From the NCBI GenBank assembly GCA_965637545.1, contig OZ281497.1, positions 2,356,001-2,420,000 of the forward strand: a stretch of DNA of 64,000 bases, read 5' to 3'. The position numbers and the translations under genes were made by a program. This stretch comes from Phallusia mammillata (Eukaryota). The notes beneath the pieces are model-generated. The model ran no database searches. It had not been told where the DNA came from and saw only the letters and a program-made list of their open reading frames with translations. Positions 39,859 through 63,054 of the stretch are shown in pieces. Numbering within the stretch: position 1 is the first letter of the stretch; every line of letters begins with the position of its first letter.

Positions 39859-40281
39859 ATGGTGCATATGAAACTTTACGTTCGACCAACTTTCGAACAA
39901 GAACATGCAACGAAACTTAGATGTTTCTACCTGATAATTGACTACGAACATGTAGCTGAAGTTTACGAGACGGTAAAAAGGGTTTTTAAAATGCATTTCC
40001 ACCATCATGCCCCTTCCAGGCCATCTGTACCCAGGGGCAGCAAGGGTGTTGTCACAATCGAATTCAAGATTTCAAACGACTGCTGGCGCATACGAGAGTG
40101 GTATGATTGGGTCAACTTGGAGTTTATGAACCAACTGGAAAATATTGGATGGAATTTGACAGTGGGAATAGATGTTTATGATTCCGAAGGCCTGATTTTC
40201 AACAAACTGAACGTGGAAAAGAAACCGGAAATGACATTAGATGAAGTATTAGGAAAAGGAAAAAAGCGCAAAAGAATATAA
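39859..40281 (+). CDS. Uncharacterised small-protein family member A1 (140 aa, basic C-terminal tail)
   Basis: Intact ORF MVHMKLYV...NLEFMNQLENIGWNLTVG...GLIF...KGKKRKRI. Many synonymous differences from A2. Confidence 0.85.
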   Translation: MVHMKLYVRPTFEQEHATKLRCFYLIIDYEHVAEVYETVKRVFKMHFHHHAPSRPSVPRGSKGVVTIEFKISNDCWRIREWYDWVNLEFMNQLENIGWNLTVGIDVYDSEGLIFNKLNVEKKPEMTLDEVLGKGKKRKRI

Positions 40282-40639
40282 AGTTGTTGCAAAATTCAAA
40301 AAAATGTATAAAGCTCTACCCAAGCATTCTTTTTCATGCATAAAAGTACTTAAAATGTTAACACATATTGTCGTTTTCCAATTGAGGCGGGCCCAAGCTA
40401 AACTACTGGGCGAATAGAGTCTTTGTTTACAGTGCGCTCAACCAGCACAATAGAAGCAGTGGAGATGGTACGTTAATTTCAAAAGGTATCGATGGTCACA
40501 AAATCCGATGAGAGTATACTTTCTTTACGGCAATAGGCAGCACTATAAATAACGGTCAAATTTACTTGGCGTTTAGGTGAAAGTATTTGCAAAACCTAAT
40601 CATTCGTTGCATTTTAAAGTACAGGATATTAAGTACAGA

Positions 40640-41062
40640 ATGGTGCATATGAAACTGTACGTTCGACCAACTTTCGAACAAGAACATGCAACGAAACTCA
40701 GATGTTTCTACCTAATAATTGACTACGAACATGTAACCGAAGTTTATGAGACGGTGAAAAAGGTTTTTAAAATGCATTTCCACCACCATGCCCCTTCTAG
40801 GCCATCTGTACCCAGGGGCAGTAAGGGTGTTGTTACAGTCGAATTCAAGATAACAAACGACAGCCGCTGGATACGAGAGTGGTATGATTGGGCCAACTTG
40901 GAGTTTATGGACCAACTGGAAAATATTGGATGGCATTTGACAATGGGAAAAGATGTTTATGATTCCGAAGGTCTGATTTTCAACAAACTGAACGTGGAAA
41001 AGAAACCGGAAATGACATTGGATGAAGTATTAAGAAAAGGAAAAAAGCGTAAAAGAATATAA
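40640..41062 (+). CDS. Uncharacterised small-protein family member A2 (140 aa)
   Basis: The ATG at 40640 aligns with the A1 start; 13 of 140 aa differ from A1. Confidence 0.85.
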   Translation: MVHMKLYVRPTFEQEHATKLRCFYLIIDYEHVTEVYETVKKVFKMHFHHHAPSRPSVPRGSKGVVTVEFKITNDSRWIREWYDWANLEFMDQLENIGWHLTMGKDVYDSEGLIFNKLNVEKKPEMTLDEVLRKGKKRKRI

Positions 41063-41656
41063 ACTTGCTGCAAAATGCCAAAAATGTGTAAAGCTGTACC
41101 CAAGCATCTTTTTTACGTTTAAATGTACTTAAAATGTTAACACATATTGTCGTTTTTCAGTTGAGGCAGGCCCAAGCTAAACTATTGGACGAACAGAGTC
41201 TTTGTTTACTGTGCGCTCGACCAGCACAATAGAGGTAGTGAATAGAAATGAAATTCAACGCTCATAACAGCTTCGGTTGGTCGTTCTGCTTGGTTGATTA
41301 CAGGTTGTCAAACCATTGCACCAAACCTATTTTTTCTGTCATAAAGGGATCTACTTTCAAACTATTTTACTGCGATCCTCGTGTAGCCTACTACAGTAGC
41401 ATATATGACATATTTATAAAGGTGTATTTTCTTTTGCGTAATCTCTTTAATCAGCTAAATTTGAAGTCAAAAAAGGTTAAAAGAAACGTACGCTTGACTT
41501 GACATGAGCACCGCTACCATATTTGGCCTGCTTTGTAAAAACTTGTATGTATGTGTGTTTGATGGTTTGTATATTTTTCTAGTACGAGTATGTTTAACAG
41601 TACCAGATAAAAAATATATGTTTTACCACATAAACTAAAACCAAGAAACTTTAATT

Positions 41657-42082
41657 ATGCCTCACTTAAAAATCTACATGACTCCAAGTAACGAAGGAAA
41701 ATCGTTCGCTTACATCAGGAAAATTTTCATTATTGTCGATTCTGAACACAAGTCAAAAGTGTACGAGCAAGTAAAAACGGTTTGCTCAACCCAATACCAC
41801 CGAACTATCCCATCTCGTCCGTCTGTGGCCAGAGGTAGCAAGGGAGTCATAGCGATTGAAGTCAAAATACCTGGCGATTTTCGCAAAATATCGGAATGGT
41901 ATCACTGGTTCAATGTGGAATTGCTGGACAGACTTGAAACAAACGGATGGGATTTGCTAATGGGGGAAAATGTTTTTGATGAAAAGGGACTGATTTTTAA
42001 AAAGGTTTTTGTTGAAAACAAACCACAACTCACATTGGATGAAGTTTTAAAGGCCGGAAGAAAACGTAAAAGAAGAATTTAA
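41657..42082 (+). CDS. Uncharacterised small-protein family member A3 (141 aa)
   Basis: MPHLKIYM...PSRPSVARGSKGVI...NVELLDRLETNGWDLLMG...GLIFKK...KAGRKRKRRI is clearly homologous to A1/A2. Confidence 0.85.
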   Translation: MPHLKIYMTPSNEGKSFAYIRKIFIIVDSEHKSKVYEQVKTVCSTQYHRTIPSRPSVARGSKGVIAIEVKIPGDFRKISEWYHWFNVELLDRLETNGWDLLMGENVFDEKGLIFKKVFVENKPQLTLDEVLKAGRKRKRRI

Positions 42083-43328
42083 ACTTTTTTTAACGCTGTG
42101 TATTCGTTAACAATGAAATTTTTGTGGAAATACATTTTTTAAGTCATGCCAGAATTTTAATGGCAGTTACAATTTTCTTAAATCGAACAATTAATTAGGA
42201 TAACACACATAGATTCAGAATTTTTTAAATATTGAAGCAAGAATTTATAGCATTTTGAGTTTATTTCGCTTGGCGAAAGGACACTAAACAATTTCAATGC
42301 ACACGTAAACCAAACAAATAATTAAGATAACAAATTGGATTTAACAGGAAACGTTAATGAGCTCTACCGGTAAAACTACCAACCGTTTTGTCTGTTTATT
42401 TTCATCCACCAACACAATAGGCTTTCGTGGGTAGAAATGGAACCTTACGCTATACTGGGTTTGTCGTTCCGCTTCAGTGGTTTTGAGTGGTGTCATAACA
42501 AAGGCTCAACTGTTGTCGGTGAAATTTAAAAAGCATTTCAGCACAGCTAACGTATAACAGCTCAGAATCAGTTTAATGCTAAGTAAACGAAATAAAAATG
42601 CAGATCTGACATATGATATTGCCTCAATTTGTAATTAAAATCTAGTTAAAGGCCCAAATGTTGTACCAGACTGTAGCTACCCCTGCAAATGATGGCCTAA
42701 TATATAAAAGCAGACTGCAGCAAAAAAAAACGAAGTAAATGATAGCAAATGACTATACGCAAAATAGCTTGTCAAGCCTAAAATCAAATACGCCAGTTTA
42801 ATTAACATTCATTGCTAAGTTGAGATGAGAGATGAGATGAGTTTATTTTGCTTGGTGAACATAGCGACACAATAGCTCTAAAACAATCACCAAGCCGAAA
42901 ATAGCTGCGCAACGTCAAAACGTTATGGAGCGCAAAACAATGATGGACACAATTGGTGGATAATATGGCTGAACGCACTGCAGCTACACTGCATTATAAG
43001 GCGTCACAGGTGACCAGGGCACTTTTAATACGTCAATGGTAAAAGTGAGTCCCTCAAGGCTATTCAAGCAACTTTACATGTAAAGTATCTTTGAATGCCG
43101 TAGTATAGGGAAAAGACATTCTAAAAAATCTCGCAGTCCTGGTGGTTATTAAATTAAACAAAGCTTTTTTGTAGTTTTCATTGCATTCAGTTTCTATTTA
43201 TATCAATCGTTTCAACTTGAAATTACTTTTGTACGCAAAAGAATTTTAGTTCTTTAACTTTAACAATCTTTACAAACTAGACAGAAACAAATTGAACGTT
43301 TTTTAAACCAAACAGACACAGTTTCGTC

Positions 43329-43745
43329 ATGGGACACATGAAAATCTTTGTGGAGCCTGGCTATGAAGAAGACCCGAGCGCCACCACTCGTACCATGCAC
43401 GTTTCAATGGACCCCGAGCACAAGTTGAAAGTCTACGAACACATTCGCACCCTATGTCGAAACTACTACAACAGGGAAATTCCCACTGACCCCTATGTAC
43501 CCAACCGTAGCGACGGGGTTATCGGGATCTTTGTTGAAATAAAAGATCACCCCAAAAAAGAGAGGGAATTTTACGAAAGGTTTAATGTTGATATTATGGA
43601 CTGTTATGAACGGGACGGTTGGAATTTAATCCGGGGCCACACCGCATTTGATCAGTATGGAATGCTGTTTAAGAGAGAGAATGACAAAAAGGACCCAAGT
43701 GCCCCGGAGGAGCAAGTTTCGACCAGTAGGAAAAGAAAGAACTAA
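43329..43745 (+). CDS. Uncharacterised small-protein family member A4 (138 aa)
   Basis: MGHMKIFV...NVDIMDCYERDGWNLIRGHTAFDQYGMLFKR...SRKRKN. Confidence 0.8.
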   Translation: MGHMKIFVEPGYEEDPSATTRTMHVSMDPEHKLKVYEHIRTLCRNYYNREIPTDPYVPNRSDGVIGIFVEIKDHPKKEREFYERFNVDIMDCYERDGWNLIRGHTAFDQYGMLFKRENDKKDPSAPEEQVSTSRKRKN

Positions 43746-43905
43746 AAGTTTAAAATCAACACGAAGCTTACTGAACATTTTTGCATGTATTGGCTTTATT
43801 TGTGCTTAAGTCTTCAAACTAATATTTCTGAAATTAATCGTTTAAACTTTTTTGATTATTTCTCATTTATTTCGTTTGTATTGCATTTTGCGTATTGTTT
43901 GTGGA

Positions 43906-44157
43906 ATGGTTAATACAATCACGTAACCTATATCACGAACACTCTTAGTTTGGAAACTTTTTGCCAACCACAAACCTCAAGCTAATATGACAAGGTTTAA
44001 GAAAGGTGCCTATATTGTGAACGAAAAGTCGTTAAATGTTATCACCTTTGTTGTAATTTGGGGCAATATGTTAAAAAAACATTGAAAGTCAGGCCAGGGT
44101 TTTGTTTAAAGTGGATGCAAGGCTTTCCATGCGGATGAAATGCTTTTAAAAAAATGA
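43906..44157 (+). pseudogene. Possible highly decayed small-family remnant
   Basis: 44095-44157 translates to QGFV*SGCKAFHADEMLLKK*, resembling the family C-terminal motif. A weak MVNTIT* start lies at 43906. Confidence 0.3.
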
Positions 44158-44994
44158 AAACGTTTTTTTCAAAAACAAGGCCGAACAACAATAGTCATGA
44201 CTCATGACATAAAGGAAAATAGTAGAATCCGACTATGGCCATCTTCTATTCCGTTTACAGTGTCTTTGGTCACTTTGGTGATTAGGCGTGTTTCTATTGG
44301 AGCTTGAGTAACTCTAAACGCTTTTATGCATAGTCATTTTTTGCGGCACATTTTTATTGTATTTGAACATTATCTTTTGCATTTTCTTTTTGATGTATTT
44401 TATGGCGTGCGAAGGTTTAATCCAATTCCCAAGTAAGCTTCCAACCTGTATTTATTACTTACTTGTGTTGTTAATTACATTTTGGTACCCAAGTAAATGT
44501 GCCTGATGTTTGAAATAGAAAAGCATTATGAAAAGGCATATTCTCCACAATTGTATTTTTGCTGACAAAAGTCAAATTATCTGCTTGCATACCACACTTA
44601 AATTTATTTACACGCCTTTTGTCACGTTAATTATTGGCAATATTTACTGGTACAATCGCTAATCAGTCAGTTATAGTTTGAAATCAGCTATAAGCCAATT
44701 AAAGCGTTAAAGATATCAACTGGCATAACTATTTGGAAAAGGTTCATTGTACCAAACATAATTAAACTAGTTAATTTGTTCCAACCCATAGTTTTGAACA
44801 GTAATAAATTTGTTTTTGTACCAGTTGTGATTTTTTGTTTCGCATTTATATATACTATATTGCAAGGGGGGTGTTAAAAAAAGATGTTTTTCATTCAAAA
44901 AGTAATTTACGAAACAAAAAGTTTCTTCAACAAGTTTTTTTTAAGCTAAAACGTTTATAATTTGCGTTTTACAGCAAAGAAAAGACAGAACGCA

Positions 44995-45848
44995 ATGGTT
45001 TATTTTAAAATCTGCGCAGCAGAAAGTGGTAGGAAAACGCAGTTAAAAGCATTAGTCCCGATCCAGTTTGCTGAGGACTTACTTGAGTAAAGTTTTTCTC
45101 GGAGACTTTTCAAAGATATTCTTTCAGATTCACGACCAAAATGGTGGTGATACGTTTCGATATGACTACAAGTCAAACGGCAGGCTGGAATCTGGTTAAA
45201 GCAGTGGTGTTCAACCTTTTTTATGGGCGACCCCAATTTAAAAGAAAATTAAAACAGCGACCCCATTTTTTTCGATAGGGAGAAAAATATTTTAAGTAAT
45301 GACGAAACTGAAACTATATTCATGTAAATATACCCGCTTAATTTTCAAGTAGACTTTAAATATTAGCATTCAGAGTGCATTATTACGCTGAAATGTTGGA
45401 ACCCAAAAGTTTTATTTCATTTTGCCAATCTAATTCGTGTTAACCTCACTAGTTTGCAGAAATCAACAAATTTCTGTATTTTTACCTGTACCCGCTGTAT
45501 TATTTCGGACACAATATGTCATTCATAGGGCTGTGTCGCGTAACAATGGGTTGGACAACTTGTGTTGTATATGAATTATTGCATCACAATGATTAGATTG
45601 TGACACGAGTTACCAAGCTGTACTGCAAAACATGTTCAAAGGTTGCAAACTAGAACAAAAACGTATCATTTTCGGTAATAATTTAAACGCCAATAAATTG
45701 AATTTAAAGCGACCCCAGAAAAGGTTTAGGCGACCCCACTTGGGGTCGCGACCCACAGGTTGAAGACCACTGGATTAAAGAAAGTGACGCTTGGAACAAC
45801 ACTGGAATGCTGTTCAAGAAAAGCTCAAGTTATAAAATTTATTGTTAG
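44995..45848 (+). pseudogene. Small-family D-type pseudogene (D0) interrupted by a hAT MITE
   Basis: Starts MVYFKICAAESGRKTQLKALVP, with internal stops and a frameshift. Removing the MITE and one TSD restores GWNLVK/ESDAWNNTGMLFKK in frame. Confidence 0.75.
45202..45772. mobile_element. hAT-type MITE (571 bp)
   Basis: TIRs CAGTGGTGTTCAACC / GGTTGAAGACCACTG with TSD GGTTAAAG / GATTAAAG. Confidence 0.9.
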
Positions 45849-46159
45849 GTGCCAAACAAAAAACATATCGTCTTCTTGTATTTCGATAAAATCGTATTTT
45901 TTTGTATTTTAAGTCCTATTACGTGCAATGTAATAAAACCACATTTTTGTTTTATTAAGCCTTGGAAGGTTCTGCTGCAAGTACTTTTACCTGAATTATG
46001 GGTTTAGATTTGTCGAAAAGCTCCTATATGTTTAAAAATCCTTTGCTATCTTCCACTGAGGTCATTAACCAATTGGATTAAATATGAAAGCACCTAAAAT
46101 CCATGTGGTAATCGATTCAAACATTCATGTTATGTAAGTGCATAATAGCCACTAGATAA

Positions 46160-46230
46160 GTCGCGGACAAGGGAAACTTCCAGCAAAACTAAAATCTCGC
46201 CGTAAGTTTGTCACGTGATTTATAAAATGC
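46160..46230 (+). promoter_or_regulatory. kB-like + GTCACGTGA module, copy 1 (upstream of B1)
   Basis: GGGAAACTTCC at 46171, GTCACGTGA at 46210, then TATAAAA. Confidence 0.5.
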
Positions 46231-46282
46231 TTGACGCCAATCTTTTCGTAAATGAGGACTTATGCTCATTGCGTGTATGGGG

Positions 46283-46651: not shown

Positions 46652-47322
46652 GTATGGGGCAAAAAAACAAAACAAAAATATAAAGTCTTATATTTAATCC
46701 GAATAAACTATACATTATTTACTCCTGTAAGTTTTTGTTTCCGCTAACGAGAGCAACGATGATTTTTGTAAATATGCGATTAAACTAGCTACTTGTTTGT
46801 AGAGCGTAGCAGAACAGGAAATAAAATTCATTCAGATAAATGATTATCAAAAGTCATTTTAAAGGTGTTCTATTTCAAAAAGTCGTTGATAAAATAGCTA
46901 GTTAAACTTGCTTATACCCAGAATTAGCATACAAGACAATGTCAGTTTTTTAATTATGTTTCTGCAAGTTTTCAAATTGCATGACAAAACTTACATCATG
47001 ACAGTTTACTTTCCAAATTTACTCTTCCAGGCAAGCGTGTGCGTAGATCTAGTCACAGAATCCGGAAGTACGTGTGAAGGCATTGGACCGCTATCGCCTT
47101 ATGTTACTTGATTCAGTTTGTATTTCAGCAACATAATAAAATAAAACAGTAAAAGAGGAACAGAAAATAAAAGAAAGAAAAAAACCATGAGAAAATTATG
47201 TGAACGAAACCGTTTTATTTAACGGTATAGCGCAAACGAAAAACGACCAACAAGTACTTTACTATTCTGAACTCTTTTTACAGTATTTATATTATGGAAC
47301 GAAATTGTGCCTCAGTTTAAAC

Positions 47323-47637
47323 ATGGCTTACGTGAAAATCAATTTGGAACGGTTAGACTTCGTGGAACAGGATATGCTGTCCGTTATATTTCCAGAAGGT
47401 TTAAACAAATTTGTAAACGATGAGTTAACAAGGGGATTGGGGTTTCGCACATTACCTTCTGGTTCAGCCCTTAGTGGAATTCAGAAAGTTTCATTTGAAG
47501 TTTTCTCAAACAACGACCCGTTATACCAAATGGCAAATCTTCAAATCATCAACAAAATGGCTGAGCAAGGATTTAGACCTATAGATGGATTTAACGCATT
47601 CAGTAAAAATGGAATCTTGTTTGAACGAAGGCAATAA
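47323..47637 (+). CDS. Uncharacterised small-protein family member B1 (104 aa)
   Basis: MAYVKINL...ANLQIINKMAEQGFRPIDGFNAFSKNGILFERRQ. A splice acceptor lies about 40 nt upstream of the ATG, as in the other B copies. Confidence 0.85.
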   Translation: MAYVKINLERLDFVEQDMLSVIFPEGLNKFVNDELTRGLGFRTLPSGSALSGIQKVSFEVFSNNDPLYQMANLQIINKMAEQGFRPIDGFNAFSKNGILFERRQ

Positions 47638-49215: not shown

Positions 49216-49296
49216 TTTTTTTTTTTGTTTTTTTTTTTTGTCACTGCTGCGCACAAGTGACTATAAAAGTGTTTACAAACGGCGTTGACTAATGTA

Positions 49297-49380
49297 GCCT
49301 CATACCACTGATAATGGGATGAGAATTTGCCAAAACTTTTTGAGCATATCGCTTTACTCGTCTATTTGGGTCGTTATACT
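49297..49380 (+). mobile_element. Decayed copy of the hammerhead-bearing short repeat
   Basis: gcctcataccactgataatgggatgagaatttgccaaaact...tatttgggtcg has a mutated core. Confidence 0.55.
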
Positions 49381-49728: not shown

Positions 49729-50061
49729 ATGGTGTACCTAAAAATCATCATAGACAGAATTAACTTGCGTTTATCCTTTCACGTTGCCGACGCATATGTT
49801 GAAGAAGTTGACGAGATTGTGACAAAGTTACTGAAAAACCCGTTCAGGCCATTTTATGAACCAAACCGCGAGGAACAACCCAGCCACCGGGAATCCCAAA
49901 GCCGAACAAAATGTGTCATAAAGGGTCTTGTCTACGTAGCTGATTGGCAACAGACTATGTCAGTGAGCTTAATGGATGAACTGGAAAAAATTGATTGGGA
50001 ACTGAAAAGCGGAAAAAGTTTAGCGGAAGACGACGGGCTGCTGTTTTACAAAGACGACTGA
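49729..50061 (+). CDS. Uncharacterised small-protein family member C (110 aa, divergent)
   Basis: MVYLKIII...SVSLMDELEKIDWELKSGKSLAEDDGLLFYK, preceded by the acceptor tag/gaacATG. Confidence 0.75.
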   Translation: MVYLKIIIDRINLRLSFHVADAYVEEVDEIVTKLLKNPFRPFYEPNREEQPSHRESQSRTKCVIKGLVYVADWQQTMSVSLMDELEKIDWELKSGKSLAEDDGLLFYKDD

Positions 50062-50286: not shown

Positions 50287-51039
50287 TATTATAGTTAAAA
50301 AGGCAACCTAAGCCATGCTGTTGACGATTTTGATCTATTACTAAAGTTGTCATTTTGGATTTCATACAGACTATTTTCTGATTGCAGTAATGCTAAACCA
50401 AATAACCTTAACCTTTTTCTTTTGTTGATAACTTAATAGATTTCGAACCTAAAATTCAACCTAAGTTCTTTGAGGCGATAATTTAACTCAACTAAAATTT
50501 GCCTATAACTTTGATTTTAACCCATAACATATGTCAAATTTTTCCTGGTCAAAGAAAATTCTAGTTAATATGTTGGCACTGGTCACATGATTCTGTGAAT
50601 CGCCGTGAAAGTTTGATGGTTTTATTTTTTGAGATTACACAATAAATTTCTAAAGAGCGTTGTGTTTTTACTACTTTAATCTGCAGCGGGTCGATTTATT
50701 CGAGATAAAAGGGTGCTTGGTAGGAGAAACTAGTGTATGGAGTAGTTGTTGATTACTTTTCAAAAACGAAGCTTCGCTCACGTTTTGAAATGAATACAAA
50801 CTATTTAACCCTGGTCTGTCAATCATGTTCTGCATTTTCAAGTTTTATCTCGCTTTAAAGAACTGTTTCAGATTTGTTGTATCACAAAAACGATTTGTTG
50901 TTTCGTTAGTGCAGGTTTTGAGAGCGGATGGTTAAGTCAGCATTAACAAAATGATGTACAATTGCTGTCACGTATCGCCGCAGTTTGCAAACATACTTAC
51001 TAGTCCATTGCAAGCAAACCTTGCAAAAAATAAAGCGGT

Positions 51040-51127
51040 GCAGTCACGAACATGGGAAACTCCCTACGAAATCAGTCTCGACACGGGTTTGTCACGTGAT
51101 TCGCGTGAAGTCTGCGCCACCAATCAG
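51040..51127 (+). promoter_or_regulatory. kB + GTCACGTGA module, copy 2, with candidate 5'UTR donor (upstream of B2)
   Basis: GGGAAACTCC at 51054, GTCACGTGA at 51091, CAG/GTAAAC at about 51127. Confidence 0.55.
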
Positions 51128-52260
51128 GTAAACATTTGTAAGTAATATTATTGCGCTTGTTCTTATTACATGTAGAGTCAACAAAAGAAACAAGCTGGTT
51201 GGCTTTTATTAACGGAAAAACTGTACCCATGGTTTATCTTTCTCAAGCGCGTAAACGGTAAAAAGAGTTGCAAGCTTAAATTAAAAATCACAGGCTTTGA
51301 TTCGATACACTGGCATTTTTGTTACGTTTTTATTTTGTCATCTATTTACGACGTCATAACATATTTCTATGTCGTGTTCGCTGTAACGAATTGTCGAGGG
51401 GACGTGGCCCCACGCTGCTGAGAAACCGGCAAGTTGGAGTTGGAGTTGGTGTTGAACGGTGGTTGTGTCGAGACTGTATATCTGCGCTGCTTGCCTTTTT
51501 ATCGTTTTACTCTATTAATACAAGTTAATTTGGGTACTGACAGCCCGTTATTGCAGCAGAACCAAACAAAGGCGTAACATTTTCACCTACGTTTCGACTT
51601 GATTCGAGCTCGGCCTTTTTTAATTGGGTTCGGGCTGAAGTTGTGGTTTGTATTTTTCGGTTCCGGCCCCAATGTCATGCCCTATAGCTCTTACTACTTC
51701 GGGCGATGTTTCTTAACATGTTACTGCATAGTTGGGTCAATGGGCAGTTTTGATAATACAAATCTAATTAATGCGAAAACTATTATTTTGCAGACTTATG
51801 AAAAACTGGCTATTAGAGCTGGTGTTGCGTTTTTGTAATTAAACAACAATATAATCGGGTTTCATATAACCTCTTAGAGTGTATACCCCACATGCGGGGA
51901 ACATAAATATCATTCGGTATACCATGTCATGCGTTAACAGCCTTCACGAAAGAAGGCCAATTTAAACAAGATTGTAATATTTGTGCAGCAGCGGCTTGAG
52001 ATGCTAAGTTAAACACTAAACGCCATAAGATACTTCACAGCAGAAAAAGCAGCCTAGCACAAACGATGTACATGTTTTGAACAAAGATAGCTTTTGAAAA
52101 AAGGAGCGGATAAACAAAAGGGATTTGAAACAGTTTTGACGGTAGCGAATAAAAAAAAGGAAGGACAATAAATGTATGTAGCCTCAGGCCATTGTTATTT
52201 TTAATTCTTTTGATTTTGCAGTCTTCATATCATCAAACGAAGTTGTGTATTAGTTTTAAA

Positions 52261-52590
52261 ATGCTGACTTACGTGAAAATGTATCTGAGTCGGACCGGTG
52301 ACAAATCGTACCTGTCAGTTATATTTCCAAACGTTTTGGAGGAATTTGTAACTAATCAGCTAACACAGGGATTTGCAATTAGAGATTGTGAAGGTCCTTC
52401 CGGTTCAAAGGGTGTTGGAGTTCAAATAATTGAATTTGGACTTAATACAAACTTCAAAAACGAAAACGCCCCAAATGTCCAGTTGATGAACCTTGGAATA
52501 ATACACAAAATGGCAAATGAAGGATTTCGCCCCATAGATGGCTGTAATGCATTCAGTGAAAAAGGAATCTTATTTGAAGAATTGCAATAA
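52261..52590 (+). CDS. Uncharacterised small-protein family member B2 (109 aa)
   Basis: MLTYVKMYL...MNLGIIHKMANEGFRPIDGCNAFSEKGILFEELQ. Confidence 0.85.
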   Translation: MLTYVKMYLSRTGDKSYLSVIFPNVLEEFVTNQLTQGFAIRDCEGPSGSKGVGVQIIEFGLNTNFKNENAPNVQLMNLGIIHKMANEGFRPIDGCNAFSEKGILFEELQ

Positions 52591-52926: not shown

Positions 52927-53020
52927 GCAGTCGCCAACACGGGAAACTCCCTGCAAAACTAAAGTCTCGACACGAGTTTATCACGTGATGTGATAAATAA
53001 GTCTGCGTCACCAAGCAGGT
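52927..53020 (+). promoter_or_regulatory. kB + TCACGTGA module, copy 3 (upstream of B3)
   Basis: GGGAAACTCC at 52941, TCACGTGA at 52981, CAG/GTAAAC donor. Confidence 0.55.
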
Positions 53021-54165: not shown

Positions 54166-54252
54166 GGCTGGAATAATTTAGGGTTACTTTTCAAGAATAA
54201 GGCTTAGCTTTAACTTTGAAATGAAATTACAATAAAAACGTTTGTTGTTCAT
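54166..54252 (+). pseudogene. 3' remnant of a D-type small-family gene
   Basis: Translates to GWNNLGLLFKNKA*L*L*NEITIKTFVVH and aligns at nucleotide level to the 3' ends of D1 and D2. Confidence 0.65.
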
Positions 54253-54897
54253 TATTATATTGTTCATTGTTTGTTGTTCATTGTATTATGTTTGTGTGTT
54301 AAAACTTATTTGGCTAACAACAATGCACTGCATTGTTTGAATTTTATAGCGTTTTGTTGTTGAGCTGTTTGATGGCTATTTAGAATTCTGTTTGTTTTTC
54401 ATTTTGTTTGACTGTTTTCATATCGAACAATGCAAACAGCGACTAAGGTCAGGAGGCGAAATAATTTCCCTTTAACAACACTGTCAACGTATTTTGTGCA
54501 AAAGGTGAACCAGGCCTATTATGCAGGTTGGCGTTGTAGCTGGACCAGTATATAAATTACAATACGGCAGTAAGTCTGTTGAGCTAAGAGAAAACATAAA
54601 TGTTTTGCGCATAGATGTTTGAATGCATGGTCAAATTTGATTTGGTAAAAGTTGTAACAAGATAGCCAAATCACGTATTGTTTACAAATTATAATTAAAA
54701 AATATATACGAAAAACGGGAATTTAAAAAGAGGAGAGGGCAAATAAACAAGTAAAAAGTCAGTTTATCAGCCAGCAAGGAATGCTTTTTACCACACAATC
54801 AACTTGGTTACTTGAAAAAAAAATTGTAGTCTAATTATTAATTATTTTTTAGTCTTGATATCATCGAACGAAGTTATCGCAGTGCATAAGTTGAAAT

Positions 54898-55278
54898 ATG
54901 ACTTACGTGAAAATGTATCTGGATCGTCCAAGCGACAACCCTGGACCTTTGGGAACTGGTCAACCGGTTATGGTGGTTATATTTCCAGAAAGTCTGGAGA
55001 AATTTGTAAATAATGAGTTAACCACGGATTTGGGGATTGGAGATCGTAACGTTTTTTCTGATTCAAAACGTTGCGAAGTTCAGAAAGTTCAATTTGGACT
55101 TCCAACGAACTTCGTAAACAAGAACGACCTTTCAGCCCAAATGGTCAATCTCGAAATAACACACAGAATGGCTAAGCAAGGATTTCGGCCAATAGATGGG
55201 TTTAATGCATTCAGTACCAATGGAGTTCTGTTTGAAAATTGCGACAAGAAAGTTGATGTTATGTCATACTCCTCGTGA
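54898..55278 (+). CDS. Uncharacterised small-protein family member B3 (126 aa)
   Basis: MTYVKMYL...VNLEITHRMAKQGFRPIDGFNAFSTNGVLFE. Confidence 0.85.
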   Translation: MTYVKMYLDRPSDNPGPLGTGQPVMVVIFPESLEKFVNNELTTDLGIGDRNVFSDSKRCEVQKVQFGLPTNFVNKNDLSAQMVNLEITHRMAKQGFRPIDGFNAFSTNGVLFENCDKKVDVMSYSS

Positions 55279-56082: not shown

Positions 56083-56469
56083 ATGGTTTACATGAAAATC
56101 CATAAAGCAGACCTTAGAGATGTTCAATTTAACGCTTTAGTCCCACATCGGCTTTTAACTCAGGTTGTAGCAGATTTGAATATCGTAATGCTACCACAAC
56201 ACTTCAACCTGTCCAGAGATTTGTCACCAATTGATAATTCAAATGTCCAAATCAATGTTTTGGAGTATTCACTAATAAGTGATCATGAGGATGACAAATG
56301 GTGAAAAACATTTAACGTACAGCTGATCAATTTACTGGAGATGAAAGGATGGAATTCGGTGGACGGAACTAGTGTCTGGAATAATTCTGGATTACTTTTC
56401 AAGAAGGAAGCTTTGCTCCAGTTGTGAAGTGAAATTACAGTAAAATCGTTTGTTGTTCGTTTGACATAA
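56083..56469 (+). pseudogene. Small-family D-type gene D1 with in-frame TGA codon(s)
   Basis: MVYMKIHK... The frame continues through TGA 56302-56304 into NVQLINLLEMKGWNSVDG..WNNSGLLFKK. A second TGA is at 56425-56427. Confidence 0.8.
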
Positions 56470-56684
56470 AACGTCTGTCAATTATATACTGCCATTTCAA
56501 ATTTTATTGTGTTTTAATGTCAAGCTGTTTTAAAAATGACTTGCTGGTTCGTTAGTGCAAGTTTTGAACGCGGGGGGGTTGAGTGAATATTATCAACAGG
56601 GTGTAAAGTTGCTGTTATATCGCTGCAGTTGGCAACATACTTCACTTGACCTTTGCAAACAAACGTTGCAAAAAGTACAAAACC

Positions 56685-56746
56685 GCAGTCGCGAACATGG
56701 GAAACTACCGACAAAACTAATGTCTCGACACGAGTTTGTCACGTGA
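56685..56746 (+). promoter_or_regulatory. kB-like + GTCACGTGA module, copy 4 (upstream of B4)
   Basis: GGGAAACTAC (one mismatch) at 56699, GTCACGTGA at 56738. Confidence 0.45.
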
Positions 56747-57614
56747 TGTCAAAATTTTTATTCGGGATTGAAATTCACACGCGTGAGTGTTTATCTTAGG
56801 ACCGTGCGCTTTCGAGTCTGGGTCGGGTTGGGTTAGGGCTTCAGTCCCAATAACACAGGCTAGTTAAACATTAAACTTGGGAAAAAAATAAAAAATATAG
56901 ACTTTGTAGTGGTATATGTGTTACGGAATTATTTTGGGCCCGAACCCCGTCCTGTTTCTTAAATTTAGGGAATTGGCTTTGTTATGGATTTTGGGTTTGT
57001 ACTTTTGGGTTCGGGCCCCAATTTTATGCCCTCTTACAACTGTGAGCGACGTTTCTAACATGTTACTCCATGGTTAGGTAGTTTTAATAAACAAAAATCT
57101 ACCTAAAGCGAAAATTATTATTATGCAGACTTATGAAATGCTGGTGATTAAAGCTACTTCAGTTGGTGTTGCGTTTTTGCATTTAAACAATATTATAACA
57201 TCACATAAACTTTTGGAATTTATATCTCACATGCGGTACATACCTATTATTCGGTATATCATGTCATGCGTTAACATCTTTCACAAAAGAAGGTCAATTT
57301 GAACGAGATTGTAATATTTGTGCAACAGCGGCTTGAGATGCTATTAACTATAGTTAAACATTACACGCCATGAAGATACTTCACAACAGAGAAAACAGCC
57401 TAGCACAATCGATGTACATGTTTTGAACAAAGATTAGGCTCTTGAAAAAAGGAAAGGAGAAACAAATGAATAACAAGATCAAATGAACGAAACCTTTTTG
57501 AGGGGAAGGAAACAATCAACAAAGAATGTATGTAGCCACAAGTCGCACTTGTTTTTAATTCTTTTTATCTTGCAGTCTTGCTATCATCATACGAAATTGT
57601 GCATCAGTCGAAGC

Positions 57615-57932
57615 ATGTCGTACGTTAAAATGTATCGAGATAATGCTCCCGACAACAGACAGATTTTGTCCGTTGTATTTTCAAAAAAATGGAGTGGGTT
57701 CGTCACAAGTGGATTAAAGGAATTGGGCATAGAAATTCAATCCGCTGTTGATTCGGAAAATGGTCAAGTTCAGAAAGTTGAATTTAAATTTCCCATCGAC
57801 TTTGCAAATAATTGTTTCTTTGAAATGAAGAACGTTGAAATAATGCAACTAATGGCAAAGCAAGGATTTCGGCCCATAGATGGATTTAATGCATTCAGTG
57901 AAAATGGAGTTCTGTTTGAACTACTTCAATAA
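57615..57932 (+). CDS. Uncharacterised small-protein family member B4 (105 aa)
   Basis: MSYVKMYR...KNVEIMQLMAKQGFRPIDGFNAFSENGVLFELLQ. Confidence 0.85.
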   Translation: MSYVKMYRDNAPDNRQILSVVFSKKWSGFVTSGLKELGIEIQSAVDSENGQVQKVEFKFPIDFANNCFFEMKNVEIMQLMAKQGFRPIDGFNAFSENGVLFELLQ

Positions 57933-59511
57933 ACTTGATGTTTTGTCATGATCAGTGTAAAGCTGCACGGTATAATTAAAAATGATTTTTTAAACGCATT
58001 TGTGCAAATGTATGTGGCATTGTTTTTTCGTTAATTGACTTTGATAAATCCGTAACATGCTGAATGTGACTCCATACGGTTTTATCGTTATTTGAACAGA
58101 CGTGGCAGAAAAAAACGAGATGCTAAACCAAAACTCCTTGTGCAAAAAATGTATTTTACGTGACTTATGAAATAGGCCTATTTATAGCGGTTCTCTCATA
58201 AAAAGATACTATCAATGGTGTTAAAGTAATTTTTTTAAATTTCAAAAAAATAAAACAGAACGAAAAATGACTCATGCTTTCATGAACTTTGATACACTGC
58301 CATATAATGCATAGTTAATTGAATGCTTCATAGGCCACGCAAACAGTTGGGTGTTTCTACAAACTAGGCCGCCGGTTATAAAGTAATCTGACGATTAGTT
58401 AACATGTGTATGATTGGCCACGTGGCGTCCTTGTCAATATGGTTCGAAATCGTTTGACAAAGAAAAATGATTTAAAGCATAGGACTGTATGTCAACGTAC
58501 GTATTATCTATAAAATTTAAAAGAACTAAAAAAGATTGCTTATAGGGGCAAACGGTTTAGTTTTACATTTGCAATAAACCTCCTCTAACGTATGTCCAAA
58601 ATGATTTTCGCCTCACCCTATAGTTGCTTATTTGTAAATGGACATCTAAAATAATTAAAAAGTATAAGTTTATTTTTGTAACTAACACTCTAAAACAACA
58701 GATGCATGTCAAAATGTTATTTTTTTGTGATTGTTGCCATCTAACTTTGTTTTCCGATACTCAACTGCCAGAAACTAGACATAGGTAAACAGAATGTTAA
58801 ACATTAACTTAAAGCAAACTCCACACCACTTGCTTATCTAAGTTGTTCTACGTTTTAAGTAAGGTATTAATTTGCTGTGGAATGAGCCCATGAAATAATT
58901 AATATATATTTTTATAATTATATTAAATAATTAATATTAGTCGTATATTTTTAATTTTTAGAATTTTTTTGGTATGTTGTTTTCTAAGGTATGTTGTTTT
59001 CTGTTTTCTAAATTTTTTTAATATGTTGTTTTCTTTTTTTTGGTATGTTGTTTTCTTTTTTTGGTATGTTGTTTTCTAAGTGTTAAAATGACTTCAGTAG
59101 GGAGAATAGGAGAGCCAGGTTTACTCTATTAGTTTGTGCTGAATGACAGCATCAAAATTTCAAAAAATGACTAAAACTTATTTTTTTTACCATGTTAACC
59201 AGGAAAATGGCATTTTTACCTCAGGAAAAAAACATAACATAAAGCATTGTGCTTATCAGTAGACCATTCAACTTTTTACATGAAACCAAATGATTGTATT
59301 GTAGCAATTACAAAAAAGTTTTAACACAGCAAAACTGCAGGCATTACAAAGGTTTTAAAATATGTATTACCTTTTGTACAATAATTTCCTTTCAAAGACA
59401 TTTTACCTCGAAAGTGTTATTTCGAGAATATTCTTTTATTCTTAAATATTTAACGTAACTTTATGATTTGCAGCAATTGAAAAGATTTAAAGGAATTGTT
59501 TACTAGCATAA

Positions 59512-59894
59512 ATGGTTTACATGAAAATCCATAAAGCGGACCTTAGAGATGTGCAATTTAACGTTTTAGTACCACATCGTCTTTTACTCAGGTTGAAGCA
59601 GACCTGAATCTCGTAATGCTACCACAACACTTCAACGTGTCCAGAGATTTGTCACCAATTGATGGTGCAGTTGTCCAAATCAATGTTTTGGAGTATTTAC
59701 TAACAAGTGGTCATAAGAATGAAAAATGGCAAAAAACACTTAACATACAGCTGATCAATTTATTGGAGATGAAAGGATGGAATTTTGTAGGCGGAACTGT
59801 CTGGAATAATTCTGGATTACTTTTCAAGAAGGAAGCTTTGCTCCAGTTGCAAAGTGAAATTACAGTAAAAACGTTTGTTGTTCGTTTGACATAA
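59512..59894 (+). pseudogene. Small-family D-type gene D2 with a 1-nt frameshift
   Basis: ATG GTT TAC ATG AAA at 59512. CTTTTACTCAG versus D1 CTTTTAACTCAG shows one A missing near 59586. The rest is open (ORF 59616-59894). A sequencing error cannot be excluded. Confidence 0.75.
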
Positions 59895-60046
59895 AACGTC
59901 TGTCAATTATGTACTGCTATTTCCAGCTTCATCATGTTTTGATGTTGAGCTGTTTTTGAACTGGTTAAGATTGGTTGTGTCACAAAAGTGATTTGCTGCT
60001 TCGTTCATTATATCGATGCAGTTGGCAAGCAAACTTTGCAAAACTA

Positions 60047-60459
60047 CCGTATTTGCTCGATTGTAAGCCGCGGCTTATATTGTTTTTTAGCTGTCGTTTG
60101 TGCGGCTTATAATCGAGGGCGGCTTACAATCGAGGGCGGCTTATATTTTAATTTTATACCGAAATCATTTCTACACTCCAACATTTTAAATTATTTGGGG
60201 TTCAAAACATGTATGCATGTACAGATTATACGTCGATATACGTTCTGTCGGGTACAGTTATTAACGTAACTAACAGATATGGGCAAATAGTCATACCATA
60301 TAACTACAGAATGATGTATTAGGAAACAATCGTATCTAAAATTCCAGCGTGCGGCTTACAATCGAGGGCGGCTTACATTATTTTATTAACACCTCAACAT
60401 GCGGCTTACAATCGAGGGCGGCTTATAAACGAGGGCGGCTTACAATCGAGCAAATACGG
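60047..60459. mobile_element. Tc1/mariner-superfamily (pogo/Tc2-like) MITE, 413 bp
   Basis: TA-CCGTATTTGCTCGATTGTAAGCCGC ... GCGGCTTACAATCGAGCAAATACGG-TA, with subterminal GCGGCTTACAATCGAGG repeats. Confidence 0.9.
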
Positions 60460-60467
60460 TACATAAG

Positions 60468-60560
60468 TGCAGTCGCGATCATGGGAAACTCCCTACGAAA
60501 CTAAAGTCTCGACACAAGTTTGTCACGTGATATGATAAATAAGTCTGCATTATCAAGCAG
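60468..60560 (+). promoter_or_regulatory. kB + GTCACGTGA module, copy 5 (upstream of B5)
   Basis: GGGAAACTCC at 60483, GTCACGTGA at 60522, CAG/GTAAAC donor. Confidence 0.55.
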
Positions 60561-61894
60561 GTAAACATTGACAATAATAATAATAATAGTGTGCTTGTCC
60601 TTTTGCATGTCAAGCCAACAGAAGCGTTTCATTGACTTATTGATAATAACTCTCTGGCGAAACTAAAGTCATTCTTGTCAGTGTTTTATCTTTCACACGA
60701 TCGATCTGACAATTTTCTCACGTATGCAAGCGGCGAAAAGAGTTGCAAGTTGTACCCTGCGTTTTGGTTCGGTTTCTGACCTCTCGGTCAACACCACAGG
60801 ATTGATTTGGGCCTTGCTTTGCACTCGGTATCATTTTTGCTGCATTTTCGCCGACTTTTTGGACTGATTATATAGTTTTGCGTTTTTTTTAAATCGGTAT
60901 TGGGTCGGATTTCGGGCTTGTATTTTCAGGTTCAGGGCCTCAATTTCATGCCATCTTACAATTCTAAACGGTGTTTTTAAACTGCATGTTACTACATGCA
61001 TGGCATGGTAAGATAGCGCAGTTTTAATGAACAGAAATATGCCCAAAATGAAATTTACAATTTTGCAAGCTTCTGAAATGACGGTTAGAGCTCTCTAGGT
61101 TTGTTTCGGGTAACGAAATCCTACTCTGGTCTCATCAAAATAGTTTCAATGTTTACCTACAGTATTTCAACTATAAAACAATAAAACCAACGACAAAATC
61201 ATTGGCTTAACACAACCAGCCAGTTTCAAAAGAAGGAATATATATTTCGCCCAAATGGCACCACCAGTTTCTTATTAAAATAGATTCGGTCTCATATAAC
61301 CCCTTGAAGTGTGTATGTTTACATGCGGTAATATACTATAACGTTTGGTATCATGCAGTGATTAGCACCGACCTTTGCACGCAACAACTAGTCTAACGAA
61401 AGCAAGCCAATTTGAACAAGATTGCAAAAATGTTTGCGCAACACCGACACTATATTCTTGTGCTGCGAGTTAAATATTAAATGCCGTGAAACAACTTATA
61501 AAAGACACAGATTTCGTGGTGTTGTAGTTAGATTTGAAAATTTCAAACTGGACAGAATGTCTGTTGCGTTGTGATGCAGTTAAGTTTAGAAACAAGTTTT
61601 AAATATTTCAATGTAATGCTTAACTCTGTGGTCATAACTCTGAATAAATACTTCATTGTAAAAAGAAAGCATAAGTCCAAACGGTTTACAAGTTTTAATA
61701 AAAAAAATATTGACCAAAAAAAGACAGTAAAAGAGGAAAGAAAAGAAAAAACAAGTATAAAACCAAGGAAAAATTATGTAAACGAAACCGGTAGCGATAA
61801 TAAAATCGACCAAAGATCTAGTATTGTACTATATTGAACTATTTTTATTTTGCAGTCTTAATATCATCGAACGAAATTGTGCATCAATTGAAAT

Positions 61895-62200
61895 ATGGCT
61901 CACGTGAAAATGTATCTGGAACAACAGAATATACTGTCCGTAATATTTCAAGAAGATTTCAAGAAATTTCTAAACGATGAGTTAACAACGGGATTAGGAC
62001 TAGGACCTGCTCCAATCCCCTTCCCTTCAGAACTTGGTAAAGTTCAGAAAGTTACATTTGGAGTTCCCTCAAACTACAGCTCTTCAGCTCAAATGGCAAA
62101 CTTAGAAATCATCAACAGAATGGCAACGCAAGGGTTCAGACCCATAGATGGGTCTAATGCATTCAGCGAAAATGGAATCCTATTTCAACGACCGCAATAA
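61895..62200 (+). CDS. Uncharacterised small-protein family member B5 (101 aa)
   Basis: MAHVKMYL...ANLEIINRMATQGFRPIDGSNAFSENGILFQRPQ. Confidence 0.85.
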   Translation: MAHVKMYLEQQNILSVIFQEDFKKFLNDELTTGLGLGPAPIPFPSELGKVQKVTFGVPSNYSSSAQMANLEIINRMATQGFRPIDGSNAFSENGILFQRPQ

Positions 62201-62973
62201 AGTTCAAGTTTTGTCATGATGAAGAAAGCTGAGGGTATAATTGCAAGTGATTTCACGAAAATGCATATGTGTCAATAAATGTGCCGTTGTTTTAATCCGC
62301 TAATTTAACTTTAATAAATCCGCAACAAGCTAAATGATAGCAAGTAAGGTTTTGTTGTTATTTGAATAGACATTGTGTAAAAAAACAGTAGGGTAGTTAC
62401 AGTTAAATCTGTTTTACAAGGGGTGGTCTGATGTAAAAAAAAATCCTCTTTCTTATGCTGAAACCAAGACTGAGTATACGCAGTTATACGCAGTTGCACT
62501 TTTAATTGATAACTAATTATTTATGCATTTTTACCCGGGGTCAAAGGTTAGCGGGTAATTGCGTCACGTGACTTAAGAAAGAGGCTCAATCAGATTCGAT
62601 TTGAAAAGGGCACTGACAATGCTCACAGAGAAAATATAAATATCTGAAACCACAAGGACAAATGACCTAATGTTTTCGTAAACTTAATTACACTGCTACA
62701 AAATTCATTGCATGCTTCATACACCACGCAACGATCATATAGACTGTGGCAGACAGTTGAAAAAAACTGAATACAAGGACCTGGATCCTAAAATAACCCG
62801 ACAATTAGTTGAATGTTTGCTCAAATCCGTATTCACAACTTCCAAAAACCACAAATTAACGGCCGACGGCTCTTTGCTTTCACAGTAACTTGACCCGTAA
62901 GTGAAACTTGGGTTTTGCTTGTCACGAGGATTCATGAAACGCAAGTGGACTAAAAGACACAAGGTTGTGAACA

Positions 62974-63054
62974 ATGGCTTAACAAGGATTCAGACCCATA
63001 GATGGGTTTAATGCATTCAGTAAAAATTGAATTCTATTTGAACGACTGCAATAA
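62974..63054 (+). pseudogene. 5'-truncated B-type remnant
   Basis: MA*QGFRPIDGFNAFSKN*ILFERLQ* followed by a B-type 3' flank. The sequence upstream of it (about 62790-62965) is duplicated at about 63460-63665. Confidence 0.75.

What the first reader, a model, noticed from the sequence alone, without database searches (positions are those of the whole stretch)
39859..63054. Unrecognised small-protein superfamily expanded as a ~16-locus co-oriented array undergoing birth and death
Seen in sequence: ten intact single-exon ORFs of 101-141 aa (A1-A4, B1-B5, C) and about six disrupted copies, all on the + strand within 23 kb. The subfamilies are very divergent, yet all begin M-x(1,2)-[HY]-[VML]-K-hydrophobic. 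All share [NS]-[LVI]-x-hh-x-x-[LMY]-x3-[GD]-[WF]-x4-G-x7-G-[LIMV]-[LI]-F near the C-terminus (e.g. NVELLDRLETNGWDLLMG..GLIFKK, NLQIINKMAEQGFRPIDG..GILFER, NIQLINLLEMKGWNFVGG..GLLFKK). There is no signal peptide or TM segment. I do not recognise the family. Inference: tandem expansion, rapid divergence, pseudogenes, TE insertions and shared kB-like promoters fit an intracellular immunity, allorecognition or stress-response system.
Basis: partly seen in the sequence, partly recalled or inferred. Interest (0 to 1): 0.9.

Follow-up and report, generated by a model that had tools for sequence, protein, structure and literature searches.

The report
Orphan small-protein gene array in an ascidian
A 23-kb stretch of a sea-squirt genome holds ten intact and six broken same-strand copies of a small soluble protein. 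It has no recognisable sequence relatives beyond one other sample, and its predicted fold best matches the trypanosome protein Q4D6Q6. The family is real and new by sequence, but the proposed immune role is untested.

Summary
**Observation: confirmed.**
- Ten intact + strand ORFs of 101-141 aa (A1-A4, B1-B5, C) and six disrupted copies (D1, D2, four fragments) form one family. All share the N-terminal M-x-[HY]-h-K-h motif and the C-terminal G-x7-G-h-h-F motif.
- None has a TM-like segment.

**Selection.** The family is under purifying selection.
- The A genes give dN/dS 0.09-0.21.
- The B genes give 0.28-0.70: about 0.14-0.26 in the C-terminal third and near-neutral values elsewhere.

**Relatives by sequence.**
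- There is no Pfam or PDB sequence hit.
- An exhaustive profile search of 1.8 billion representatives found two proteins, both from one other sample (DRR090687).
- Viral and metagenome scans found nothing.
- The neighbouring sulfotransferase places the genome among ascidians.

**Fold.** Two AlphaFold models (pLDDT 74-77) give a two-layer alpha/beta domain.
- All of these are ring-forming oligomers.

- The B genes probably carry a spliced 5' leader.
- The kappaB-like/E-box module belongs to the B genes only.
- The "TE insertions" are short dispersed repeats.

**Evidence gaps.** Transcript evidence is thin and covers A1/A2 only. The immune or allorecognition reading is untested.

The same scan had already noted the B-gene module (s1-355954).

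The parts
39859..40281 (+). A1, intact 140-aa gene. Basic (pI 8.8), with a C-terminal KKRKRI nuclear-localisation-like tail.
   Evidence: A 173-nt RNA-library contig lies on 39987-40159.
40640..41062 (+). A2, intact 140-aa gene. Recent tandem duplicate of A1: the 783-bp unit 39679-40461 matches 40463-41240 at 91%.
   Evidence: dN/dS 0.21, Fisher p 7e-5. RNA-library contigs lie on 40768-40940 and 40882-41067.
41657..42082 (+). A3, intact 141-aa gene ending in RKRKRRI.
43329..43745 (+). A4, intact 138-aa gene and the most divergent A copy (pI 6.3).
45774..45878 (+). D-like C-terminal fragment (pseudogene remnant).
46171..46219 (+). Conserved B-gene upstream module, copy 1: a kappaB-like site, 29 nt, then GTCACGTGAT. 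A donor-like GT follows at 46248.
47323..47637 (+). B1, intact 104-aa acidic gene. The splice acceptor ends at 47283, leaving a 39-nt leader.
49729..50061 (+). C, intact 110-aa divergent member.
50675..50794 (+). D-like degenerate fragment with stops.
51054..51100 (+). Upstream module, copy 2: GGGAAACTCC, 27 nt, then GTCACGTGAT. The donor-like CAG|GTAAAC has its GT at 51128.
52261..52590 (+). B2, intact 109-aa gene. The acceptor ends at 52221.
52941..52989 (+). Upstream module, copy 3, with the E-box variant ATCACGTGAT. The donor-like GT is at 53019.
54169..54252 (+). D-like C-terminal fragment with stops.
54898..55278 (+). B3, intact 126-aa gene. The acceptor ends at 54852, and in-frame stops lie between the acceptor and the ATG.
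56083..56427 (+). D1, a full-length D-type copy broken by one in-frame TGA at 56302-56304.
56699..56747 (+). Upstream module, copy 4 (kappaB-like site is GGGAAACTAC). The donor-like GTGAGT is at 56783.
57615..57932 (+). B4, intact 105-aa gene. The acceptor ends at 57575.
59512..59894 (+). D2, a D-type copy broken by a 1-nt deletion near 59586, with a stop at 59605-59607. Its C-terminal two-thirds are still open in another frame (59616-59894).
   Evidence: D1/D2 dN/dS is 0.58, not different from 1.
60483..60531 (+). Upstream module, copy 5: GGGAAACTCC, 29 nt, then GTCACGTGAT. The donor-like GT is at 60561.
61895..62200 (+). B5, intact 101-aa gene. The acceptor ends at 61855, and in-frame stops lie in the 39-nt leader.
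   Evidence: Structure model mfbe1e3c65432.
62863..63051 (+). B-like C-terminal fragment with two internal stops (pseudogene remnant).

Best explanation
This is a real multigene family, restricted to ascidians as far as public data show. It encodes small, soluble, leaderless proteins made of one two-layer alpha/beta domain (beta-beta-alpha-beta-alpha-beta-beta). The domain's closest solved structure is the ring-forming kinetoplastid protein Q4D6Q6.

Shown:
- The family grew by repeated tandem duplication of two units: an A unit of about 0.8 kb, and a D-module-B unit of about 2.7-4 kb.
- It evolves by birth and death. The A genes are under strong purifying selection. The B genes keep a nearly invariant C-terminal helix-hairpin (GFRPIDGxNAFSxxGxLF), while the rest of the protein drifts or diversifies. 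The D lineage is dying.

Inferred mechanism (not shown):
- The proteins are non-enzymatic subunits. No polar residue that could be catalytic is conserved.
- They assemble into cyclic homo- or hetero-oligomers and bind partner proteins through the conserved C-terminal hairpin face. The structurally similar ring proteins (Q4D6Q6 tetramer, mt-SAF24 pentamer, KCTD C-terminal domains, GFRP) work this way.
- The basic A forms enter the nucleus through their C-terminal K/R-rich tail. The acidic B forms stay cytosolic.
- The B genes are transcribed from a shared promoter/first-exon module (a kappaB-like site plus a CACGTG box) and are spliced to a conserved 39-45-nt leader.

The confidence given is for the whole statement. 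The 'what it is' part I hold at about 0.85, and the inferred mechanism at about 0.3.
For: Family and array.

Selection:
- The A pairs give dN/dS 0.09-0.21 (A1/A2 p 7e-5, A1/A3 p 9e-14).
- The B pairs give 0.28-0.70, with 5 of 7 tested pairs at p<0.02.
- Within B, the C-terminal third gives 0.14-0.26 against 0.5-1.3 elsewhere.
- D1/D2 gives 0.58, not significant.

Orphan status:
- No Pfam family and no PDB sequence match.
- The word-index searches of the 5.8-billion-cluster collection returned nothing, then only P0002.
- The exhaustive profile search of 1.84 billion representatives returned P0001 (E 2.5e-28) and P0002 (E 6e-4). Both come from Logan contigs of DRR090687, and L001 is about 70% identical in DNA to A2/A3.
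- No viral or metagenome loci.
- Ascidian context: the neighbouring sulfotransferase is 47-52% identical to Ciona intestinalis proteins and 33% to Clavelina.

Fold:
- Two models, each built with a different subfamily member as the first sequence, reach pLDDT 74 and 77 and pTM 0.66.
- Q4D6Q6 is a propeller-like tetramer (PMC10899635). mt-SAF24 is a pentamer (PMC13759221). The KCTD1 C-terminal domain and GFRP are pentamers sharing one fold (PMC7618933).

Localisation features: pI and tails.

Gene structure of B.

Transcription of A1/A2: the three non-repeat contigs from two RNA libraries (X8, X9) that land on this 5.9-kb stretch all fall inside the A1 or A2 coding sequence.
Against: - Oligomerisation, partner binding and localisation are inferred from fold analogy and sequence features. 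None was computed or measured here.
- The models are of moderate confidence and rest on alignments of only 11-12 sequences.
- The RNA evidence is three short, low-depth contigs, and the tool itself warns that DNA can be present in RNA libraries. No B, C, A3 or A4 transcript was seen.
- The splice sites are predicted, not observed.
- The B genes' overall dN/dS of 0.5-0.7 could partly reflect relaxed constraint.
Confidence: 0.55

Rival explanations
1. One reading: an inducible intracellular immunity, allorecognition or stress-response system. The B paralogues diversify to recognise varied targets and are switched on through Rel/NF-kB and a bHLH-zip factor (TFEB/MITF/USF type) at the shared module. 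This concerns function and could be true alongside the structural explanation.
For: - The array is tandem and shows birth and death.
- In B, dN/dS is near or above 1 in the N-terminal and loop windows, next to a constrained C-terminus.
- Five fixed-spacing modules carry GGGAAACTCC-type sites and GTCACGTGAT, one ahead of each B gene. They are better conserved than their flanks.
- GTCACGTGA occurs 11 times in the window against 0.37 expected.
- From my own knowledge, GTCACGTGAC is the CLEAR/TFEB consensus.
Against: - There are no expression, induction or polymorphism data.
- No B transcript appears in the RNA contig sets listed.
- Only 3 of 5 kappaB-like sites fit the consensus.
- The motif copies share ancestry through duplication, so they are not independent.
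- The dN/dS windows span 15 codons and are noisy.
- The A genes evolve conservatively.
- Many non-immune families also form such arrays.
Confidence: 0.15
2. True but very remote homologues of the kinetoplastid Q4D6Q6/Q586B2 family, either through an ancient shared eukaryotic domain that is unrecognisable by sequence or through gene transfer. They might then share properties such as tetramer formation and leaderless secretion.
Against: - Sequence identity in the structural alignments is 9-14%.
- Neither the PDB sequence searches nor the 1.84-billion-protein profile search returned any kinetoplastid protein.
- The published survey found that family only in Trypanosomatidae and Bodonidae.
- Small two-layer alpha/beta folds recur by convergence.
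Confidence: 0.15
3. [quoted passage not shown]
For: - The language-model feature search lists a GFRP cluster for both A3 and B5 (scores 0.78 and 0.84).
- The proteins are of similar small size, and the first strand starts at the N-terminus.
Against: - No member matches Pfam PF06399, even at E up to 10.
- GFRP is absent from the top 50 structural hits for the A1 model.
- The Foldseek match to 1jg5 has probability 0.38 and TM 0.26-0.39.
- The feature scores lie in the range the tool says shuffled proteins reach a third of the time.
Confidence: 0.05
4. Not functional cellular genes: either neutrally decaying ORFs, cargo of a mobile element or virus, or exons of one larger gene.
For: - Six copies are already broken.
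- Transcript evidence is thin.
- Short dispersed repeats lie in and beside the array.
Against: - Ten frames stay open across synonymous divergence of 0.5 to above 2, with dN/dS significantly below 1. The D copies show what decay looks like here.
- There are no viral or metagenome relatives, no viral fold match, and no TE-like ORF was recognised in the array.
- Every copy ends in a stop codon, and the B genes have AATAAA/ATTAAA 30-152 nt downstream.
- In-frame stops lie between the acceptor and the ATG in B3 and B5, so these are not internal exons.
- An A-type orthologue is conserved in a second species.
Confidence: 0.05

Closest known systems
Q4D6Q6 (T. cruzi, PDB 6xyb/6xyd) and its T. brucei homologue Q586B2
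   Different: There is no detectable sequence similarity (9-14% identity in the structural alignments, no HMMER hit). Published surveys restrict that family to kinetoplastids. [quoted passage not shown] Tetramer formation and secretion are untested here.
mt-SAF24-type C-terminal domain in the T. brucei mitoribosomal small-subunit assemblosome (PDB 6sga/9hny, chains FQ-FU)
   Different: There it is one domain of a longer (>215 aa) mitochondrial protein. There is no sequence similarity. That the five chains are the pentameric mt-SAF24 is my reading of PMC13759221; I did not check it against the PDB entry.
KCTD C-terminal / H1 domains (KCTD1, 8, 12, 16) and GFRP
Lineage-specific tandem gene families of ascidians, for example the other arrays this scan noted in the same genome
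   Same: Same-strand tandem array, birth and death of copies, compact genes, shared duplicated promoters.
   Different: The protein family itself is undescribed, intracellular and very small. Its subfamilies differ in charge and in a nuclear-targeting tail.

Membership tests
GFRP (Pfam PF06399) | Significant match to the GFRP profile | tested here: not met
   No member matches at E up to 1 or up to 10. No GFRP chain appears in the PDB sequence searches.
GFRP (Pfam PF06399) | GFRP fold over the whole chain | tested here: inconclusive
GFRP (Pfam PF06399) | Pentamer that binds GTP cyclohydrolase I | not testable with these tools
   Multimer prediction and binding assays were not available.
KCTD proteins | N-terminal BTB/T1 domain | tested here: not met
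   The proteins consist of one 100-140-aa domain. There is no BTB hit in Pfam.
KCTD proteins | C-terminal/H1 domain fold | tested here: inconclusive
Q4D6Q6/Q586B2 family (kinetoplastid) | [quoted passage not shown] | tested here: met
Q4D6Q6/Q586B2 family (kinetoplastid) | Detectable sequence homology | tested here: not met
   No 6xyb/6xyd chain appears at E up to 10. No kinetoplastid protein is among the hits of the 1.84-billion-protein profile search. A profile-profile test could not be run because no Q4D6Q6 sequence was available by reference.
Q4D6Q6/Q586B2 family (kinetoplastid) | Propeller-like homotetramer | not tested
DUF4177 (PF13783) | Match to the profile | tested here: not met
   There are only language-model feature hits at 0.76-0.79 and no hmmscan hit.
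NF-kB-regulated genes | Functional kappaB site (GGGRNWYYCC) in the promoter | tested here: inconclusive
   A consensus site is present in 3 of 5 B modules, with near-matches in the other 2. Binding and induction are not testable here.

The most novel reading that the evidence does not exclude
The array encodes a chordate counterpart of the kinetoplastid Q4D6Q6/Q586B2 ring proteins. These would be leaderless, oligomeric signalling or recognition subunits, with nuclear (A) and cytosolic (B) branches. The B paralogues would mix into hetero-oligomers with diversified surfaces and would be induced through a combined Rel/NF-kB and TFEB-type promoter module. That would make it a previously unseen intracellular innate-immune or allorecognition module in tunicates.
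Probability: 0.08. Interest if true: 0.8.

Novelty: new variant of a known kind. Interest (0 to 1): 0.45.

Why it matters
- **An unannotated gene family.** Its genes are missing from the public protein collections searched, and public data show the family in only one other sample.
- **A fold known from parasites.** Its predicted fold links it to a small group of ring-forming regulatory domains. The best-matching one has so far been described only in kinetoplastid parasites, where one member, Q586B2, is a virulence factor.
- **If the fold match reflects homology,** that "kinetoplastid-specific" family is much older and wider than thought.
- **If it does not,** the array is still a compact natural experiment in how a small oligomeric domain diversifies. 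It offers nuclear basic forms, cytosolic acidic forms and dying copies side by side.
- **Experimental access.** The shared, sharply conserved promoter/leader module gives a handle for reporter assays in ascidian embryos.
- **The immune reading.** It would matter for the evolution of chordate immunity, but it remains speculation.

Tried and rejected
- **Pfam scans.** Eight members at E up to 1 and all twelve aligned members at E up to 10 gave only scattered single-member hits, with no family in common.
- **Protein collection searches.** The word-index searches with the family alignments found nothing, then only P0002. The exhaustive profile search found only P0001 and P0002.
- **PDB sequence searches.** Three profiles returned only chance-level hits.
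- **Viral and metagenome scans.** Scans with the A and B sub-alignments found no relatives. The whole-family alignment was too divergent for that tool.
- **Foldseek.** Searches against PDB, AFDB clusters, Swiss-Prot and viral models gave no hit at E of 0.001 or below. ESM Atlas shape searches gave only generic alpha/beta sandwiches at TM about 0.5.
- **GFRP and DUF4177 leads** from the language-model search were followed and not upheld.
- **Tautomerase-like N-terminal proline.** It is present only in A3 and P0002, so it is not a family feature.
- **Exons of one large gene:** rejected (stop codons, poly(A) signals, in-frame stops in the leaders).
- **Weak tblastn hit at 30209-30337** (E 0.007). 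It matches only the last third of A1, including its lysine-rich tail, so I judged it spurious.
- **RNA families and tRNAs.** Rfam and the tRNA scan of the window found nothing.
- **DRR090687.** The run is not mentioned in the paper library, so its species is unknown to me.
- **RNA runs for B3-B4:** none holds the region.

Full report
**1.

Between 39.8 and 63.1 kb the + strand carries ten intact ORFs of 101-141 aa:
- A1 39859-40281, A2 40640-41062, A3 41657-42082, A4 43329-43745
- B1 47323-47637, B2 52261-52590, B3 54898-55278, B4 57615-57932, B5 61895-62200
- C 49729-50061

tblastn and a family HMM run on all six frames of the window find six more copies, all on the + strand and all broken:
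- D1 starts at ATG 56083 and is full length, with a single in-frame TGA at 56302-56304.
- D2 starts at ATG 59512. It has a 1-nt deletion near 59586 and reaches a stop at 59605-59607. Its C-terminal two-thirds remain open in another frame to 59894.
- Four remnants lie at 45774-45878, 50675-50794, 54169-54252 (all D-like) and 62863-63051 (B-like).

Nothing comparable lies on the other strand or in the first 39 kb.

Every intact copy and both D copies start M-x(1,2)-[HY]-[VML]-K-hydrophobic. The two glycines and the phenylalanine of G-x7-G-h-h-F are invariant.

The subfamilies are only 15-26% identical to each other, yet each scores E 1e-27 to 1e-42 against the family profile. There is no TM-like segment: the highest 19-residue hydropathy mean is at most 1.04.

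**2. These are genes under selection, not chance ORFs**

| Comparison | dN/dS | Test |
|---|---|---|
| A copies | 0.09-0.21 | A1/A2 p 7e-5; A1/A3 p 9e-14 |
| B copies | 0.28-0.70 | 5 of 7 tested pairs p<0.02 |
| D1/D2 | 0.58 | p 0.33, not different from 1 |

- The A frames stay open across saturated synonymous divergence.
- Within B, the constraint is very uneven. The C-terminal third (helix 2 and the hairpin GFRPIDGxNAFSxxGxLF) gives 0.14-0.26. The N-terminal two-thirds give 0.5-1.3 in 15-codon windows. These windows are noisy.
- The D1/D2 result is consistent with decay.

A tree puts B with D on one side and A with C on the other, with good support for that split. It resolves B (96/97) and D (83/81) as groups, while the A/C side stays unresolved, with C and P0002 on long branches.

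**3. Architecture**

- A1/A2 is a 783-bp tandem duplication at 91% identity.
- The right half of the array is built from five rounds of one unit: a D-type copy or remnant, a conserved module, then a B gene.
- The module has fixed spacing. A kappaB-like site (GGGAAACTCC in three copies, near-matches in two) is followed after 27-29 nt by [G/A]TCACGTGAT. A splice-donor-like site (CAG|GTAAAC, GTAAAT or GTGAGT) follows 28-36 nt later.
- Each B gene has a textbook polypyrimidine-CAG or -TAG acceptor 39-45 nt before its ATG. The short leader after the acceptor is better conserved than the coding sequence.
- In B3 and B5 this leader contains in-frame stops, so the annotated ATG is the start.
- My reading, inferred only: the B genes have a short non-coding first exon next to the module and an intron of 0.8-1.8 kb. 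Alternatively, the acceptor takes a trans-spliced leader, as is common in tunicates.
- The B genes have AATAAA/ATTAAA 30-152 nt after the stop.
- The module was noted independently in this scan (s1-355954). I confirm it, but it belongs to the B genes only.
The first of them is abundant in RNA contigs.

**4. Where it comes from**

- The neighbouring intron-poor sulfotransferase ORF (33883-34800) has its best named matches in Ciona intestinalis (47-52% identity) and Clavelina (33%).
- The genome is therefore an ascidian, but not C. intestinalis itself. The run and organism names are coded.

**5. Relatives by sequence: essentially none**

- There is no Pfam family, even at E up to 10, and no PDB sequence match.
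- An exhaustive HMMER profile search of 1.84 billion representatives returned two proteins. P0001 is 141 aa and A-type (E 2.5e-28), with the same KRKRRI tail. P0002 is 111 aa and divergent (E 6e-4).
- Both come from short Logan contigs of one run, DRR090687. L001 is about 70% identical in DNA to A2/A3 over its coding part, so that sample is a related species. The A type therefore predates that split.
- Viral and metagenome scans were blank.

**6. Fold**

- Two AlphaFold2 models were built, one led by A1 and one by B5. They reach pLDDT 74 and 77 and pTM 0.66, and both give beta1-beta2-alpha1-(loop)-beta3-alpha2-beta4-beta5.
- Foldseek finds nothing at E of 0.001 or below in PDB, AFDB or viral models.
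[quoted passage not shown] KCTD C-terminal domains share fold and pentameric assembly with GFRP (PMC7618933, PMC6851490).

**7. What it most likely is and does**

Shown: a lineage-restricted family of small soluble one-domain proteins with a Q4D6Q6-like fold, expanded in tandem and turning over.

Inferred, at about one chance in three for the whole chain:
- The proteins are non-enzymatic, because the invariant residues are structural glycines and hydrophobics and no polar residue is shared.
- They form cyclic oligomers and use the nearly invariant C-terminal hairpin as an interface or partner-binding face.
- The basic A forms (pI 8.8-9.7, with a K/R-rich C-terminal tail conserved in the second species) are nuclear. 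The acidic B forms (pI 5.0-5.7) are cytosolic.

The kappaB-like site and the CACGTG box suggest regulated transcription. GTCACGTGA[C/T] resembles the CLEAR/TFEB motif; this rests on my own knowledge.

**8. Transcription evidence is thin**

- In two RNA libraries (X8, X9), the three non-repeat contigs that land on the 5.9-kb A region all lie inside the A1 or A2 coding sequence (39987-40159, 40768-40940, 40882-41067). Their depth is 3-5. The tool warns that DNA can contaminate RNA libraries.
- No RNA run listed holds the B3-D1-B4 stretch.

**9. Verdict on the interpretation**

- [quoted passage not shown] is supported.
- "Immunity, allorecognition or stress response" is an open guess with no direct support.
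- The family is new by sequence and new to annotation, but its fold is a known kind.
- Interest is moderate. Such lineage-specific arrays are common in this genome. The unusual points are the link to the Q4D6Q6 fold and the clean split between nuclear basic and cytosolic acidic forms.

Noticed in passing
window 47245-47322, 52183-52260, 54814-54897, 57537-57614, 61817-61894: The 39-45-nt leader between the predicted splice acceptor and each B start codon (consensus ...ATATCATCGAACGAAATTGTGCATCAGTTGAAA) is better conserved than the B coding sequence. It may be a translational or RNA-level control element.
   Followed up: partly
window 38892-38988 and 63941-63996 (related to 27753-27848): Copies of the ~100-bp dispersed repeat that another note (s1-355992) reads as a hammerhead-like element lie just outside both ends of the array. 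Rfam found no family at gathering score anywhere in the window.
   Followed up: partly
window 42833-42963 (related to 28297-28436, opposite strand): A short dispersed repeat between A3 and A4 is present at high depth in many unrelated contigs of three RNA libraries (depth 136-487). It is probably a SINE/MITE-like element carried in many transcripts.
   Followed up: no
window 22730-22739, 62563-62572, 63516-63525: Perfect palindromic GTCACGTGAC sites lie outside the B modules. GTCACGTGA occurs 11 times in the window against 0.37 expected.
   Followed up: no
window 40282-40639: A1 and A2 are only 358 nt apart, and no AATAAA/ATTAAA follows A1, A2 or A4 within 600 nt. They may use variant poly(A) signals or be co-transcribed. 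A TATAAA box lies about 100 nt before the A1 and A2 start codons.
   Followed up: no
window 41504-41654, 41810-41960, 43348-43498: Run X6, labelled as a different organism (B), holds 151-nt contigs identical to the window around A3 and in A4. This suggests a mislabelled, mixed or very closely related sample.
   Followed up: no
window 41530-41560 (upstream of A3): A CCATATTTGG element, which has the form of a CArG box, lies about 120 nt before the A3 start codon. It could be chance.
   Followed up: no
window 33883-34800: A long open exon encodes a carbohydrate sulfotransferase (Pfam PF00685/PF13469 relatives). Its best named matches are in Ciona intestinalis at 47-52% identity. It was used here only to place the genome among ascidians.
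   Followed up: partly
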